A stretch of DNA of 63,145 nt, filler included, from Octopus bimaculoides (Eukaryota), in assembly GCF_001194135.2 (NCBI RefSeq). It is 4 parts of 4 records of this genome, joined end to end, with 100 filler letters (N's around TTAATTAATTAA, not from the genome) between each part and the next. Parts side by side here need not be neighbours in the genome. Positions count along the whole stretch, not along the records: positions 30,864 to 53,773 come from NC_068988.1; 3 more parts are not named here. One strand, 5' to 3'. Under the pieces are notes generated by a model. That model had not been told where the DNA came from. It searched no databases and saw nothing but the letters and a program-made list of their open reading frames with translations. This document shows, in pieces, positions 42,009 to 51,999 of the stretch. The position numbers and the translations under genes were made by a program. Numbering within the stretch: position 1 is the first letter of the stretch; each line of letters starts with the position of its first letter.

Positions 42009-42330
42009 ATGTCAAATCAAAACCATATGATTTTCAGTCGTCTGCAAGTTTTCACAATTATTTTGCTCGTGATCTTTACAACTAGTCAGCCAAACAATGA
42101 CGGACAACTTTTTAGGAAAACGTCCACGTCAAGATGCTGGAAATTTCCAGTAGTAGAAAGAGAATATACCTCATCCGTCACGGAATGCTCATTACGGTGT
42201 CTGTTGAATGACAAGTGTGGTTATTTTAGCTATTGTAATGGACCGTGCAAAATGCATGAATTGTTGTACAGCGATGGACTTGTGGAAACTGAATGCAATT
42301 GTTCATCTTTCATCAGGTTCTCTGGAAACA
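42009..42330 (+). CDS. PAN-family paralogue B, exon 1: signal peptide plus PAN/apple-type domain (MSNQNHMIFSRLQVFTIILLVIFTTSQ...CWK...ECSLRCLLNDKCGYFSYCNGPCKMH...ECNCSSFIRFSGN)
   Basis: Acceptor ttttcag at 42000, hydrophobic N-terminus, C-x3-C-x5-C PAN-like spacing with 8 Cys, and a GTGAGT donor (phase 1). Confidence 0.88.
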
Positions 42331-43291
42331 GTGAGTAAAATCAGGTTTTCTTTTGTGTACGTATGTGTGTGTGCTTTTTTTGTGTCTGTGTGTCTGTTTA
42401 ACTCTGTTTTCGATCATATTACATTAATATTACTAAATCAGTTCTTTTATATCTCCATGCCTTCCCTGATTTATTCTCTAAACTGTTCTAGTTCTCTACA
42501 TCTATCAGATTACATCTTTTACACAAACTTAATGGTTCTCTCGTTATAGTTTAGACAAGTGCATAAAACGGTCGTAAAATTATCGTAACTTGTCAGGAAT
42601 TAATTTCCCTTTCTCACAAAATAATTAAGATTACATCATTTAAAGACTAATATCACAACCGAATCATTTTATAATTTTTTTTTTCATGCAGATGGCGTCG
42701 ATAAGAATTATTTTCATTTTTTTTTTCATTTTAAGCAACGACTTATATCGTCATTATCTTTATCAGTTAGTCTTTATTCATAATTCTTTCAATAAAATAT
42801 TTTATCGATTTATTGTCAGAGAAATAGACCTACTGTGGTCGCTCGACCAGCTTGAAATATAAAACAATTCTCCTTGAAATTACATCCTATCATTTTGAAA
42901 AGAATGGTAAACACTGGATTATTTTGTTCAAGATACGAAATTTATAACATATGGACGGGGGGGGGGGGGCCTGGCTAGAACAACTTTTCTTATAAGTTTT
43001 CTCAATCAGCGTTGAGGTGGTGCTAAATAGCAACAACAACTACGTTCTCGTATTTCATTTGAATATCAAATTCTGAAATTAGTGAAATAGAAACTAAAAA
43101 ATCAAAAATATTAAAATGAATCTTGGGAAAATTTTATATCGAATATAAAAATAAAGATTCCTAAATGAAAGCAATAGTTTCACTCTATTGTATAACAAAT
43201 TAACATATTTCTTTCAAAATCTTAATGAAATTTCTTAAAGAGTTTGTCCATTCCTTTACATTTAAATCATTTCTATTCATGACTCATGCAG

Positions 43292-43383
43292 GTTCGGGCT
43301 GGCAGAAAATATTCGTGTTCAACAAAACGGCTATTAAAAAGAGTCCTATTTATAAACACTGGAACATTTTGCCTATTGAAAAG
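43292..43383 (+). CDS. PAN-family paralogue B, exon 2 (92 nt, phase 1/0): (S)SGWQKIFVFNKTAIKKSPIYKHWNILPIEK
   Basis: catgcag acceptor and AAG|GTAATA donor. Bridges exon 1 to exon 3 in frame. Confidence 0.87.
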
Positions 43384-43646
43384 GTAATACATTTTCAAAA
43401 TTTCAAAACGATTATCATTTAATAAACCGTCTTCATAGCTGTCAGTTATGTCTTGGCTGTTATTATTTTATATTTTCCTCTCGATATTGCCATTGTATAT
43501 CTAATTTAATTTCTTGATATTGTTGACGCTGTTGCTGTTTGAACCATGCGGGCTCAGTTTTAGCTCCTTCAAGTCCCATATTCCTTGCTTCGGTATTCAT
43601 ACGCAGATACAAAAACAGTCACACTAACGTATACATACACACATAC

Positions 43647-43705
<59 letters not shown>

Positions 43706-44650
43706 CATGCATGCACACACATTTGTACATATACGCACGCGCGTACAAGCTGACACAGAAATAAACACGCCCACAAATATTCTTATTTGGTTATTTCTTT
43801 TAGCAAGAAAGCTCAAAGATAGCTAACTGTAAATGCTTAGCAACTAAAAAGTTCACCCAAAGAAAGAAACTCTACGCAATCGTTTGGTTTCATGGAAATA
43901 TCAGATAAGTCTACTACAAATCAGAAAATATCTAATCTTGAGTACTGTTTCCTGAGAAGCAGCATCTTGAGAAAGTTCAAGTTTGGAACTTCTCGTTGTA
44001 AAAGTCTCAGAGATATAAAGCCGCTCTGAAGGCAATTCTTTGAGAATAGAAAAAGCTGTACTATAGGACACTGAGGAGGGAGAGAGTGAGGGAGAGGGAG
44101 GGAGAAAGAGAGACCTAAGGTGGAGTAGAATGGATTGTTCGTTACTGATTCCATTGTTTTTGAGATCTTGCAGTGTAAGGACGTTTTGGGGGAATCTGGT
44201 TCAAAGAAACTCCCCTTCTTGGGAATCGGAGACGCCATCGCAGTTTTTACAGATGAGAACAACTCATTTGCTTTGGTAAATACTGGTGATTTTGATAAAC
44301 AGTTACTCCTAAATCAATATGTATTAGTTTGTCATCCACTTCAATCTTCCATAAGGTACACAAAAATGCATGCATATATTTCCCTAGAATTCTGTCTTTC
44401 TAAACGGACCCCACCCATTTTTCTTGTCATTACTTTCTTACAATCATCTTTCTTCATTTCCTCTCGTTCGCTCTCCATTTCTCGCTCTCCATTTCTCGCT
44501 CTCAATCTCACCGTCCCTCTCTCTGTCTTCCAACTTTTTCTCTCCATCTTTCTTTCGTCTTCCTGCTTTCTCATTTAATCTCACGCTCGCCTCCTTTCTC
44601 TTTCACTCTGTCAGATTTTTCGTTGATCTTTCTTCACCTTTTATTTTCAG

Positions 44651-44802
44651 GTGAAACTGATTTTGAGAAATAATAATACGGAGGTTCAATCATTAACATT
44701 TGATGGAAGAGGAACAACTTACACATCCTGGTTTGATCCTAGTAAACTCATTACAACACCATGGTTTGGAAACACATCAGTAACATACAGCTTCAAAGAA
44801 AA
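44651..44802 (+). CDS. PAN-family paralogue B, exon 3 (152 nt, phase 0/2): VKLILRNNNTEVQSLTFDGRGTTYTSWFDPSKLITTPWFGNTSVTYSFKE(N)
   Basis: ttttcag acceptor and GT donor. FDGRGTT..SWF...L..TPW motif shared with A. Confidence 0.87.
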
Positions 44803-50255: not shown

Positions 50256-50429
50256 TATCCTTATCGCTGTACTTACTGTTGCTGATGCTGTTGCTGCTGC
50301 TGCTACTGCTGTTGCTGTTAGTTTTATTATTTCATTAGTATTAGTATTATTTTATTCCATGGTGCTTTCTCAACATTAATATATTCAAGGCCATGTGTAG
50401 ATATATATATGTATGTATGATTGACCGTT

Positions 50430-50632
50430 GACTGAACACTATTCAATTTTTTTTCTCCGTGTTTTTCTCCTTGTCTCCGTATTCTTTCTGTTGAAGAGCG
50501 TAGCTTGAAACGTCAAAGACTTTCCGTATTCCCGAGCGTCATACTAATATATACTTTTGTTATTTACACCACCTGTCCTCGTCTGTTGTTATTTTTTGTA
50601 TATTCTCCCATATATATATATATATATATATN
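50430..50632 (+). mobile_element. Penelope-type terminal repeat with a minimal hammerhead-like motif, followed by (TA)n
   Basis: Shares the sequence at 2960-3030 next to the GIY-YIG remnant. TCTTT-CTGTTGA-A-GAGC gta GCTT-GAAA-CGTC-AAAGA. Confidence 0.65.
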
Positions 50633-51410
50633 NNNNNNNNNNNNNNNNNNNNNNNNNNNNNNNNNNNNNNNNNNNNNNNNNNNNNNNNNNNNNNNNNNNN
50701 NNNNNNNNNNNNNNNNNNNNNNNNNNNNNNNNNNNNNNNNNNNNNNNNNNNNNNNNNNNNNNNNNNNNNNNNNNNNNNNNNNNNNNNNNNNNNNNNNNNN
50801 NNNNNNNNNNNNNNNNNNNNNNNNNNNNNNNNNNNNNNNNNNNNNNNNNNNNNNNNNNNNNNNNNNNNNNNNNNNNNNNNNNNNNNNNNNNNNNNNNNNN
50901 NNNNNNNNNNNNNNNNNNNNNNNNNNNNNNNNNNNNNNNNNNNNNNNNNNNNNNNNNNNNNNNNNNNNNNNNNNNNNNNNNNNNNNNNNNNNNNNNNNNN
51001 NNNNNNNNNNNNNNNNNNNNNNNNNNNNNNNNNNNNNNNNNNNNNNNNNNNNNNNNNNNNNNNNNNNNNNNNNNNNNNNNNNNNNNNNNNNNNNNNNNNN
51101 NNNNNNNNNNNNNNNNNNNNNNNNNNNNNNNNNNNNNNNNNNNNNNNNNNNNNNNNNNNNNNNNNNNNNNNNNNNNNNNNNNNNNNNNNNNNNNNNNNNN
51201 NNNNNNNNNNNNNNNNNNNNNNNNNNNNNNNNNNNNNNNNNNNNNNNNNNNNNNNNNNNNNNNNNNNNNNNNNNNNNNNNNNNNNNNNNNNNNNNNNNNN
51301 NNNNNNNNNNNNNNNNNNNNNNNNNNNNNNNNNNNNNNNNNNNNNNNNNNNNNNNNNNNNNNNNNNNNNNNNNNNNNNNNNNNNNNNNNNNNNNNNNNNN
51401 NNNNNNNNNN

Positions 51411-51443
<33 letters not shown>

Positions 51444-51928
51444 TAGCGTTCTAAAATTACACCTTCACATATTGTTGAATTCTTCCTCATCCTCTCTGCA
51501 AAGTTCTTCTTGATGTCTTTATCCCTGAGGCACAATCTTCATGATTTTCCTTTAAAATGTATTATAATTGTGAAGTCACCTTAAAAGCAACAATGTATCT
51601 ATAAAATACCCGTAATATTAAATGAATAAATACCCTGTAATTTGCGTACAGCCCATAAAATATATTTTGCTCGTTGATCGACAGACATCGAAAGCGAATC
51701 TAATAAAGGTAACACTGTATTCTCTGATTATTATATATGTTCCATTAATTGCATTTGCATATTAAAATTGTTTCATTTAGTCGTTTTTGATTCTTATTTA
51801 ATTATACGTTTCAAACATTTACTTTCGGCATCGAATATGTATTTTTCATCTAAATGAAATTGCCAAAAGTACACATAAACACAATCTGTATTTCATTTGA
51901 TTTAAAACAAATCTTCATTTTATTTCAG

Positions 51929-51999
51929 TGATGCAGGGAAAAGTTGGACTGGAAACTGTGGATGTCTCCATCTTATTACAGCAGAATTCAAATAATTAG
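51929..51999 (+). CDS. PAN-family paralogue B, terminal exon: (L)MQGKVGLETVDVSILLQQNSNN*
   Basis: tttatttcag acceptor, phase 1. The five exons total 744 nt = 247 aa plus stop. Confidence 0.82.

What the first reader, a model, noticed from the sequence alone, without database searches (positions are those of the whole stretch)
42009..51999. Hidden five-exon gene for a secreted PAN/apple protein with an unnamed, cysteine-free C-terminal domain
Seen: five exons with canonical AG/GT and matching phases (1, 0, 2, 1) join into 744 nt, giving 247 aa. The protein has a signal peptide, an 8-Cys PAN-like module (C-x3-C-x5-C core), then about 140 aa with no Cys, the motifs GWQKIF, IYKHW and FDGRGTT..SWF...L..TPW, and about 7 N-x-S/T sequons overall. 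Known: PAN/apple modules mediate protein and carbohydrate binding. Inference: this is a secreted binding glycoprotein. The C-terminal motif recalls uncharacterised invertebrate secreted proteins, but I cannot assign it a named family.
Basis: partly seen in the sequence, partly recalled or inferred. Interest (0 to 1): 0.75.

Follow-up and report, generated by a model that had tools for sequence, protein, structure and literature searches.

The report
Unannotated octopus secreted apple-domain gene
This is a real, intact octopus gene for a small, probably secreted protein that joins an apple (PAN) domain to a cysteine-free, shortened version of a widespread but unnamed invertebrate domain; it belongs to a fast-evolving tandem gene family whose function is unknown.

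Summary
The five exons exist exactly as described: 744 nt, 247 aa, phases 1,0,2,1, all AG/GT, 8 Cys and 7 sequons. The assembly gap lies inside intron 4, within an insertion that the O. vulgaris ortholog and the upstream paralog both lack, so it does not touch the coding sequence.

All five exons and their splice sites are conserved in O. vulgaris. There are no indels in 744 nt of exon, against 8.9 gap openings per kb in non-coding DNA. Only 0.27% of matched randomisations keep the frame open.

One correction: a conserved upstream micro-exon (38769-38781, MNLK+G) splices in frame to 42001. The likely product is therefore 254 aa from six coding exons.

The N-terminal module has the PAN/apple fold by structure, though it scores below Pfam thresholds.

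The C-terminal domain has no Pfam family or solved-structure match, but it is not an orphan. Its core belongs to a family of about 300 protein clusters in cnidarians, molluscs, bryozoans, echinoderms, hemichordates and amphioxus, all uncharacterised. In cnidarian members it directly follows a fibrinogen/COLFI-type A-subdomain, and a model of the whole module matches fibrinogen-related domains. The octopus form is probably a truncated, disulfide-free derivative of that fold.

Function is inferred: a secreted binding protein. dN/dS is about 0.8. Interest is moderate.

The parts
38598..38768 (+). Conserved 5' flank (putative promoter / 5' UTR) just upstream of the micro-exon
   Evidence: Window 38598-39026 aligns to the 5' ends of two O. 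bimaculoides paralog genes (L001 9874-10259 and 36188-36399, 74-81%). It also aligns to the O. vulgaris ortholog at 87%.
38769..38781 (+). Upstream coding micro-exon: ATG AAT CTT AAA G (MNLK plus the first base of Gly), donor GTAAGT
   Evidence: The sequence and donor are identical to those at the annotated CDS start of P0001 (L001 10001) and of the next paralog (L001 36360). It is in frame with the acceptor at 42001. In O. vulgaris the ATG is GTG.
42001..42330 (+).
   Evidence: Acceptor tttttcag|GAGAGG, donor AACA|gtgagt. 90% identical to O. vulgaris. tblastn to P0001 gives E 2.5e-41.
43292..43383 (+). Coding exon: SGWQKIF...SPIYKHWNILPIEK
   Evidence: AG/GT sites, phase 1 to 0. 90% identical to O. 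vulgaris.
44651..44802 (+). Coding exon: VKLILRNNNTEVQSLTFDGRGTTYTSWF...TPWFGN, the conserved core of the C-terminal domain
   Evidence: AG/GT sites. A family HMM built without octopus short-type sequences matches residues 125-190 of the 254-aa product at 65.6 bits.
47146..47252 (+). Coding exon: NFQRIHIKVSGTSWYAMRAQKLNVTYYEIVYRQNAT
   Evidence: AG/GT sites, phase 2 to 1. It matches the exon-4 region of homologs. Conserved in O. vulgaris with both splice sites.
48039..51440 (.). Lineage-specific insertion in intron 4; it contains the assembly gap 50632-51410
   Evidence: Absent from the O. vulgaris ortholog (L002 21501-21525) and from the upstream paralog. Minus-strand ORFs in it have no Pfam match.
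51929..51999 (+). Last coding exon: (L)MQGKVGLETVDVSILLQQNSNN, stop TAG
   Evidence: Acceptor ttatttcag|TG. It matches homolog C-termini (LEALDIYALLK and similar). Conserved in O. vulgaris. An AATAAA lies at 52116.
32565..36554 (+). Last three coding exons of an upstream tandem paralog (32565-32716, 34558-34664, 36493-36554); its 5' exons lie beyond the edge of the piece
   Evidence: Exon lengths 152 and 107 nt are the same as in the target, with AG/GT sites and an open frame ending ...DISISLEQN*. Window 31186-37554 is colinear with 43746-53698.

Best explanation
The locus is an intact protein-coding gene in a tandem array of an octopus gene family.

Shown:
- It has one N-terminal hydrophobic stretch, a PAN/apple module with eight Cys, and a cysteine-free beta-rich C-terminal domain of about 140 aa carrying most of the seven N-glycosylation sequons.
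- The core of the C-terminal domain (about residues 118-183 of the 247-aa product) belongs to an unnamed extracellular domain family found in Cnidaria, Mollusca, Bryozoa, Echinodermata, Hemichordata and Cephalochordata. There it often follows a PAN domain or sits in mosaic proteins with EGF, Sushi, C-type lectin, ZP and other modules.

Inferred, moderate support:
- That family is the distal part of a very divergent fibrinogen-related (FReD / COLFI / intelectin-like) module.
- The octopus short-type proteins have lost most of the A-subdomain. They keep only SFIRFSGNSSGWQKIF, which I read as corresponding to FPVYCDMAAGGWTMVF.
- They have also lost the roughly 19-residue Cys-bridged loop present in the cuttlefish homolog and in the long-type members examined.

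Inferred, weaker:
- The protein enters the secretory pathway, is N-glycosylated, and acts outside the cell as a soluble recognition or binding protein.
- The apple module and/or the FReD-derived sandwich would contact a glycan or protein ligand.
- Tandem duplication together with dN/dS near 0.8 fits a family that diversifies quickly, as immune, mucosal or reproductive recognition proteins do.
For: Gene model:
- Canonical sites and phases.
- Ortholog colinear at 80-87% over 16 kb with all exons and sites conserved.
- No exon indels against 8.9 gap openings per kb outside exons; open frame kept in only 0.27% of randomisations.
- Upstream micro-exon identical to the annotated paralog starts.

Secretion signal:
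- The only hydrophobic segment is N-terminal.
- The paralog model has a low-confidence helix there, ahead of the folded part.

PAN/apple:
- Recurrent sub-threshold PAN_1/PAN_4 hits across paralogs.
- 28 of 105 family members have PAN_1, best E 2.8e-8.
- A profile search of solved structures finds apple domains, MIC4 at 0.015 and kallikrein at 0.09.
- The AlphaFold2 model of paralog P0001 (pLDDT 84, pTM 0.77) matches 1hky, plasminogen PAp, FXI A4, the HGF N domain and MIC4 at probability about 1 and rmsd 2.6-3.9 A over about 80 residues. It also matches giant-virus PAN proteins.

C-terminal family:
- 297 cluster representatives at E<=1e-3 and 62 at E<=1e-10, mostly matching profile positions 125-205.
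- An octopus-only profile finds the cuttlefish P0013 at 1.3e-7 in 5.8 billion sequences.
- An HMM built without octopus short-type sequences hits the target at 65.6 bits.

FReD link:
- Cnidarian members carry Pfam COLFI (30.6 bits, above the cut-off, positions 20-108 of 233) and Fibrinogen_C (positions 4-53 of 221) directly N-terminal to the domain.
- A profile search of solved structures finds intelectins, angiopoietins, MFAP4, FIBCD1 and tenascin.
- hhalign gives probability 95% for the A-subdomain.
- The AlphaFold2 model of P0172 gives 126 Foldseek hits at E<=1e-3; all of the 50 listed are FReDs or intelectin. The alignments span about 250 columns with target-normalised TM 0.44-0.52.

Evolution:
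- dN/dS is 0.83 against the ortholog and 0.98 against the paralog.
Against: - No transcript evidence could be examined, and no SignalP-type predictor was available.
- dN/dS near 1 is also what a decaying copy would show.
- The target's own PAN scores (11 bits) are well below the Pfam cut-offs.
- The FReD link rests on neighbouring sequence and on a mediocre model (pLDDT 68, rmsd 7-10 A). Profile-profile comparison of the domain alone against FReD or COLFI is negative, with probabilities 0.03% and 0.3%.
- The confident model of the octopus paralog finds no FReD, and nothing significant at all, for its C-terminal half.
- The canonical FReD ligand pocket (P-subdomain Ca site and disulfide) is absent, so lectin activity cannot be read across.
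Confidence: 0.6

Rival explanations
1. The C-terminal domain is an independent, previously undescribed extracellular fold. Its position next to a fibrinogen/COLFI A-subdomain in cnidarian proteins would then be domain shuffling, not common descent with FReD B/P subdomains.
For: - Domain-only profiles show no similarity to FReD or COLFI.
- The domain-only profile finds nothing in the PDB sequence set.
- The confident octopus model has no significant structural neighbour for this half.
- The domain occurs after PAN, EGF, Sushi, CTLD and other modules without a detectable complete A-subdomain.
- The Foldseek match of P0172 has high rmsd and modest TM, and could be carried by the A-subdomain plus a few strands.
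Against: - A-subdomain plus domain is about the size of a FReD or COLFI domain.
- The COLFI hit runs to model position 108, past the A-subdomain.
- The Foldseek alignments span about 250 columns.
- The C-terminal strand resembles that of intelectins (weak second alignments).
- PAN-type members keep the GW..(V/I)(F/Y) junction strand.
Confidence: 0.3
2. The gene is a decaying tandem duplicate (a young pseudogene or a non-functional copy) that merely still has an open frame.
For: - dN/dS is 0.83 against the ortholog and 0.98 against the neighbouring paralog.
- Exon identity (85.0%) is barely above non-coding identity (81.8%).
- A 3.4-kb insertion sits in intron 4.
- No matching protein or transcript-derived sequence is in the public collections.
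Against: - The frame, all splice sites and the exon lengths are kept in two species.
- There are no exon indels, against about 6.6 expected from the non-coding rate.
- Only 0.27% of randomisations stay open.
- The residues invariant across the six aligned octopus sequences (V139 K140 L141, W165 F166, P175 W176 F177 G178, Y219 R220 and others) and all eight Cys are retained.
Confidence: 0.07
3. The N-terminal hydrophobic stretch is an uncleaved signal anchor, so the protein is a type II membrane protein displaying the two domains on the cell surface rather than a soluble secreted protein.
For: - A 19-residue window reaches Kyte-Doolittle 1.7-2.0 at residues 12-15 of the 254-aa product.
- With the upstream start, the polar region before the hydrophobic core is long, about 18 residues.
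Against: - The strictly hydrophobic core is only about 14 residues (LQVFTIILLVIFTT).
- It is followed by a small-residue motif (TTS|QP), which is typical of cleaved signal peptides by general knowledge of the -3/-1 rule. This was not tested with a predictor.
Confidence: 0.1

Closest known systems
Octopus bimaculoides LOC106876622 and LOC106876621 (P0001, P0002; UniProt 'Apple domain-containing protein'), O. sinensis LOC118764577 (P0006)
   Same: Same architecture and length (243-250 aa). They share the MN(L/V)KGM start exon, signal peptide, 8-Cys PAN module and cysteine-free C-terminal domain. They are 59% and 55% identical to the first 188 aa of the target.
   Different: They are paralogs at another locus. 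L001 is only 62-80% identical to the window where it aligns. None has been characterised.
Octopus vulgaris 'Hypothetical predicted protein' P0003 (OX597821.1, locus L002)
   Same: True ortholog. There are 16 kb of colinear DNA at 80-87% identity, and all five reader exons and splice sites are conserved.
   Different: The deposited model is a 125-aa fragment that starts inside exon 1 and reads into intron 1. The upstream micro-exon has GTG instead of ATG, so translation there must start at METSNQ in the next exon.
PAN/apple domains (plasminogen PAp, HGF N domain, factor XI/prekallikrein apple domains, apicomplexan MIC4 and SML-2 lectins)
   Same: The fold of the N-terminal module matches in the paralog model. 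The C-x3-C-x5-C core pattern is present. These domains mediate protein or galactose binding (established knowledge).
   Different: Sequence scores are below the Pfam gathering thresholds. The module has eight Cys rather than four or six. It is fused to a different partner domain.
Fibrinogen-related domain superfamily (ficolins, angiopoietins, tenascin FBG, mollusc FREPs, intelectins, fibrillar-collagen COLFI)
   Same: Long-type relatives carry a FReD/COLFI A-subdomain immediately before the domain, and a whole-module model matches FReD structures. The octopus motif SGNSSGWQKIF resembles DxxxGGGWTVIQ.
   Different: There is no Pfam Fibrinogen_C or COLFI hit on the octopus protein. No Cys, no P-subdomain Ca site or acetyl pocket is recognisable. 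The domain-only profile comparison is negative. The octopus model has no FReD neighbour.
Long-type members of the same unnamed domain family (cuttlefish P0013; O. bimaculoides LOC106873068 and LOC106884519; Pocillopora P0077; Branchiostoma P0019)
   Same: Shared core W..L.I..VK..L....V....F.G.G....WF....L..SPW. Many also start with a PAN domain.
   Different: They keep the segment C..D.GW...C.W....YP.ILYS with two conserved Cys and the ending AD..AI.I. The octopus short type lacks about 19 residues there and has no Cys.

Membership tests
PAN/apple domain (Pfam PF00024 PAN_1, PF14295 PAN_4) | Profile score at or above the curated gathering threshold | tested here: not met
   Target: PAN_1 11.3 bits (cut-off 21.4) and PAN_4 11.5 bits (cut-off 27). 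The eight homologs scanned (octopus paralogs and the cuttlefish P0013) are also sub-threshold. In the wider family 28 of 105 members match PAN_1, best E 2.8e-8.
PAN/apple domain (Pfam PF00024 PAN_1, PF14295 PAN_4) | Fold: a helix packed on an antiparallel beta-sheet of about 80 residues | tested here: met
   The AlphaFold2 model of paralog P0001 (pLDDT 84) matches 1hky, 4dur PAp, 2j8j FXI A4, 7mob/4iua HGF N and 4a5v MIC4 at probability 0.92-1.0 and rmsd 2.6-3.9 A over 77-82 columns. BFVD PAN proteins match as well. This was tested on a 59%-identical paralog, not on the target.
PAN/apple domain (Pfam PF00024 PAN_1, PF14295 PAN_4) | Conserved core cysteines (C-x3-C-x5-C plus partners forming the core disulfides) | tested here: inconclusive
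   C60-x3-C64-x5-C70 is present, and all eight Cys lie at 43-98. Disulfide pairing was not examined.
Fibrinogen-related domain (Pfam PF00147 Fibrinogen_C) / COLFI (PF01410) | Profile match | tested here: not met
   There is no hit on the target at E<=10, nor at E<=1 on the eight homologs scanned (octopus paralogs plus the cuttlefish P0013). Only cnidarian long-type relatives match, and only over the A-subdomain and a little beyond (Fibrinogen_C positions 4-55, COLFI positions 20-108).
Fibrinogen-related domain (Pfam PF00147 Fibrinogen_C) / COLFI (PF01410) | A-subdomain with its disulfide and the VYCDM..GGGWT strand | tested here: not met
   The octopus proteins keep only a look-alike of the last strand (SFIRFSGNSSGWQKIF). 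The preceding approximately 35 residues are replaced by the PAN module.
Fibrinogen-related domain (Pfam PF00147 Fibrinogen_C) / COLFI (PF01410) | P-subdomain with a conserved disulfide and a Ca/ligand site | tested here: not met
   There is no Cys after residue 98. The octopus clade lacks the approximately 19-residue C...C segment present in the cuttlefish P0013 and in the long-type members examined.
Fibrinogen-related domain (Pfam PF00147 Fibrinogen_C) / COLFI (PF01410) | Overall fold similarity to solved FReDs | tested here: inconclusive
   Cnidarian relative P0172: 126 Foldseek hits at E<=1e-3, and all 50 listed are FReDs or intelectin, but TM is 0.35-0.52 and rmsd 6-11 A from a model with pLDDT 68. 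Octopus paralog P0001: no FReD among the listed hits. Domain-only hhalign is negative.
Unnamed invertebrate extracellular domain family (no Pfam entry; consensus W..L.I..VK..L.K....V....FNG.GS....WFS..RL..SPW.DL) | Significant profile match to the conserved core | tested here: met
   An HMM built without octopus short-type sequences gives 65.6 bits over residues 125-190 of the 254-aa product. The whole-library search finds 297 representatives at E<=1e-3.
Unnamed invertebrate extracellular domain family (no Pfam entry; consensus W..L.I..VK..L.K....V....FNG.GS....WFS..RL..SPW.DL) | Distal half with two conserved Cys (GC..D.GW....C.W....YP.ILYS) and the terminal AD..AI.I strand | tested here: not met
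   The Cys-containing segment is deleted in the octopus short type. Only a terminal (L/V)D..D(I/V)..LL strand remains.
Pfam DUF7922 (PF25538) | Profile match | tested here: not met
   Only the four-copy amphioxus protein P0019 reaches 32 bits, as a sum of weak partial hits, with no single stretch significant. None of 105 family members matches. No paper mentions the family.

The most novel reading that the evidence does not exclude
The C-terminal domain family is a genuinely new extracellular fold shared by cnidarians, lophotrochozoans and invertebrate deuterostomes, not a fibrinogen derivative. It would be a new ligand-binding module. Octopuses would then have evolved a disulfide-free minimal version of it, fused to an apple domain, in a rapidly diversifying tandem family used for recognition (immune, mucosal, chemotactile or reproductive).
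Probability: 0.3. Interest if true: 0.6.

Novelty: new variant of a known kind. Interest (0 to 1): 0.45.

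Why it matters
- It adds a correctly modelled gene, and shows that its O. vulgaris ortholog is mis-annotated, in a lineage-specific, tandemly expanded family of octopus secreted proteins.
- It shows that the 'orphan' C-terminal domain is the stripped core of an unnamed domain family of about 300 protein clusters spread across marine invertebrate phyla. The family has no Pfam entry, I found no paper on it, and none of the 30 representatives looked up carries an informative name.
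- Defining that family and settling whether it is a cryptic branch of the fibrinogen-related superfamily would improve annotation of many extracellular mosaic proteins. That superfamily supplies innate-immune lectins in molluscs and other invertebrates, so the result could point to a new class of recognition molecules.

Tried and rejected
I used paralog P0001 and exon-wise translations instead.
- Target not in public protein sets. No hit of 90% identity or more turned up.
- Window is not the P0001 locus. It is only 62-80% identical to it. The source species was not identified; it is about 82% identical to O. vulgaris in non-coding DNA.
- DUF7922. I followed the partial hit in P0019 and dropped it.
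- Solved-structure sequence searches. The domain-only profile found nothing.
- Profile-profile comparison. The domain alone against FReD or COLFI was negative.
- Structure search with the octopus model. Only PAN hits came back, in both PDB and BFVD.
- Literature. Searches for the locus names, 'apple domain' with octopus, and 'PAN domain' with cephalopod found nothing relevant.
- Other features. ORFs in the intron-4 insertion and the intergenic region have no Pfam match, and there are no tRNA genes.
- P0009. It could not be located on a contig.

Full report
**1. The observation**

- 42009-42330
- 43292-43383
- 44651-44802
- 47146-47252
- 51929-51999

Each internal boundary is a canonical AG or GT behind a pyrimidine tract. 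The phases are 1, 0, 2, 1. The joined CDS is 744 nt and encodes 247 aa.

The eight Cys are at 43, 60, 64, 70, 76, 80, 96 and 98. There are seven N-x-S/T sequons. All quoted motifs are present.

**2. The assembly gap**

The gap (50632-51410) is inside intron 4. The DNA on both sides keeps the order and orientation seen in two independent comparisons.

| Window segment | Matches in the upstream paralog, same piece | Matches in the O. vulgaris ortholog L002 |
|---|---|---|
| Before the gap | 47717-47916 to 34714-34912 | 47715-48038 to 21190-21501 |
| After the gap | 51441-52204 to 35999-36819 | 51441-52219 to 21525-22356 |

The 3.4 kb between these blocks (48039-51440, gap included) corresponds to only 24 bp in O. 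vulgaris, so it is a lineage-specific insertion. Homologous proteins run from the exon-4 segment straight into the exon-5 segment with no unmatched residues. The gap therefore does not bear on the reading frame.

**3. Is it more than chance?**

A 16-kb stretch of the window (37625-53704) is colinear with O. vulgaris chromosome OX597821.1 at 80-87% identity. In that ortholog all five exons have the same lengths, the splice dinucleotides checked (the four internal acceptors and four donors) are all canonical AG and GT, and the frame is open.

- The CDS differs at 111 of 741 sites.
- When the same substitutions are placed at random, only 0.27% of 20,000 trials leave the frame open.
- The exons have no indel, whereas 11 kb of flanking alignment has 8.9 gap openings per kb.

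The frame is being maintained by selection.

**4. A correction to the model**

About 3.2 kb upstream, at 38769-38781, lies ATGAATCTTAAAG|GTAAGT. This is identical to the annotated first coding exon of O. bimaculoides LOC106876622 and of its neighbour (L001 positions 10001 and 36360). It is embedded in a 5' region conserved with those paralogs and with O. vulgaris.

It joins in frame to the acceptor at 42001 (tttttcag|GA GAG GAA ATG...). That gives six coding exons, 765 nt and 254 aa, beginning MNLKGEEMSNQ. Most paralog proteins begin MN(L/V/I)KGM.

In O. vulgaris this micro-exon carries GTG, and translation must start at METSNQ in the next exon. Start-codon usage therefore differs between the two species. 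An AATAAA lies 117 nt after the stop.

**5. Gene family and neighbourhood**

The exact product is not in the 5.8-billion-protein collection. The best hits are:
- O. bimaculoides LOC106876622 (59% identity) and LOC106876621 (55%)
- O. sinensis paralogs
- the O. vulgaris fragment P0003

All are unnamed or called 'Apple domain-containing'.

P0003 is the ortholog's deposited model. It starts inside exon 1 and reads into intron 1.

The piece also holds the last three exons of an upstream tandem paralog (32565-32716, 34558-34664, 36493-36554). These have the same exon lengths of 152 and 107 nt. Its introns and 3' flank are colinear with those of the target. The sequence after the target again resembles the paralog's 3' flank, so the array may continue downstream.

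**6. N-terminal module**

Pfam PAN_1 and PAN_4 hit the target only at E about 0.3. Several observations nonetheless point the same way:
- The same weak hits recur in nearly every paralog.
- 28 of 105 wider-family members match PAN_1, best E 2.8e-8.
- A family profile finds apple domains in the solved-structure set (MIC4 0.015, kallikrein 0.09).
- An AlphaFold2 model of paralog P0001 (pLDDT 84, pTM 0.77) matches PAN/apple structures at probability about 1 and rmsd 2.6-3.9 A over about 80 residues. The matches include 1hky, plasminogen, FXI A4, the HGF N domain and MIC4. Giant-virus PAN proteins match too.

The fold assignment is sound. Membership by Pfam score is not met.

**7. C-terminal domain**

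It has no Pfam hit and no match in the solved-structure sequences. The confident paralog model has no significant structural neighbour for this half.

It is not an orphan, though. The evidence:
- A full HMMER search of 1.84 billion cluster representatives found 297 proteins at E<=1e-3 and 62 at E<=1e-10. Most match profile positions 125-205.
- An octopus-only profile already reaches the cuttlefish protein P0013 at E 1.3e-7.
- An HMM built without any octopus short-type sequence matches the target at 65.6 bits.

Members come from corals and sea anemones, bivalves, gastropods, cephalopods, a bryozoan, a starfish, a crinoid, a hemichordate and amphioxus. Every source name is 'uncharacterized' or derives from another domain.

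The domain occurs after PAN (often), and in mosaics with EGF, Sushi, C-type lectin, fn3, ZP, D8C, kringle and F5/8-C.

The family consensus is W..L.I..VK..L.K....V....FNG.GS....WFS..RL..SPW.DL....FSI.G....R.F.I....GC..D.GW....C.W....YP.ILYS....AD..AI.I. The octopus short type keeps the first half. It has lost about 19 residues holding both conserved Cys.

**8. Relation to the fibrinogen-related superfamily**

Evidence for a link:
- In cnidarian members the domain is directly preceded by ...SCKDI...GVYWI...FPVYCDMAAGGWTMVFKA. Pfam scores this as COLFI (30.6 bits, above threshold, model positions 20-108 of 233) and as Fibrinogen_C (positions 4-53 of 221).
- A profile of these modules finds intelectins, angiopoietins, MFAP4, FIBCD1 and tenascin in the solved-structure set.
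- hhalign gives 95% probability for the A-subdomain.
- An AlphaFold2 model of Porites P0172 (pLDDT 68) yields 126 Foldseek hits at E<=1e-3. All 50 listed are FReDs or intelectin, aligned over about 250 columns.
- The octopus junction SFIRFSGNSSGWQKIF looks like FPVYCDMAAGGWTMVF.

Evidence against:
- The TM-scores are only 0.35-0.52, with rmsd 6-11 A.
- Domain-only profile comparisons with FReD and COLFI are negative.
- The octopus model finds no FReD.

I rate the FReD derivation at about 0.55-0.6. The alternative, an independent new fold, I rate at about 0.3.

**9. Evolutionary regime**

| Comparison | Region | dN/dS |
|---|---|---|
| Target vs O. vulgaris ortholog | whole CDS | 0.83 |
| Target vs O. 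vulgaris ortholog | signal peptide + PAN | 0.70 |
| Target vs O. vulgaris ortholog | C-terminal domain | 0.90 |
| Target vs upstream paralog | exons 3-4 | 0.98 |

Together with the strict maintenance of frame, splice sites, Cys and core residues, this points to a functional but rapidly diversifying family rather than a pseudogene.

**10. Likely mechanism**

Shown: the domain architecture, the single N-terminal hydrophobic segment and the sequons.

Inferred:
- The protein enters the secretory pathway, is N-glycosylated, and acts extracellularly as a soluble binder.
- PAN/apple modules bind proteins or galactosides, and FReD-type modules bind glycans in many invertebrate immune lectins (established knowledge).
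- The canonical FReD pocket is not recognisable here. The ligand, and which domain binds it, are therefore open.

**11. Verdict**

The gene is a new, un- or mis-annotated member of an already annotated but uncharacterised octopus family. Its C-terminal domain is a truncated variant of an unnamed domain family found across several phyla, probably of fibrinogen-related ancestry. Interest is moderate.

Noticed in passing
window 32565-36554 (+): The 3' half of a second, tandemly duplicated paralog lies here, with exons 32565-32716, 34558-34664 and 36493-36554. Its stop is TGA where the target reads TCA, so the target runs three codons further. Its 5' exons lie beyond the edge of the piece.
   Followed up: partly
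L002 (O. vulgaris OX597821.1 78371753-78403787, reversed), gene at 10001-22035: The deposited O. vulgaris model for the ortholog (P0003, 125 aa) is wrong. It starts at an internal Met of exon 1 and reads through the exon 1 donor into intron sequence. The full five-exon frame is intact there.
   Followed up: yes
window 38769-38771 and 42009-42011; L002 about 6254 and 9752-9760: There is a reciprocal difference in start codons between the species. The window has ATG in the micro-exon and ATG TCA in the next exon. O. vulgaris has GTG in the micro-exon and ATG GAA ACG TCA in the next exon.
   Followed up: partly
window 47316-47700 and 48038-48264: A repeat of about 400 bp has been inserted in intron 4. 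It has 78-87% identical copies at two places in the O. bimaculoides locus L001 and one in O. vulgaris L002, partly in inverted orientation. It is probably a SINE-like element; no tRNA-like gene was found.
   Followed up: partly
window 48039-51440: A 3.4-kb insertion specific to this lineage sits in intron 4. It has minus-strand ORFs of 92-141 aa that match no Pfam family, and it contains the assembly gap.
   Followed up: partly
window 33681-33884, 35672-35876, 46235-46498: A dispersed repeat of about 150-200 bp is present in both paralogs' introns, in both orientations. It has at least five copies in L002 and several in L001. In the target it is flanked by two (ATA)n arrays (45921-46016 and 46201-46289).
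   Followed up: no
window 52220-52951: A second assembly gap begins 220 bp after the stop codon. It is bordered by (AT)n/(TA)n microsatellites and lies downstream of the AATAAA at 52116, so it is probably outside the transcript.
   Followed up: no
window 53062-53704: The 3' flank of the target resembles the 3' flank of the upstream paralog (37212-37554, 89%) and the O. vulgaris flank. This suggests the tandem array continues beyond the piece.
   Followed up: no
window 31096-31186 and 41022-41183: There is a 12-bp minisatellite (CACACGCGAGCG) x7.6 in the upstream paralog's intron, and a 78-bp unit repeated twice in the intergenic region.
   Followed up: no
P0007 (O. sinensis LOC118764386, 402 aa): This paralog carries two tandem copies of the cysteine-free C-terminal domain after one PAN module, so the short domain can be duplicated on its own.
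   Followed up: no
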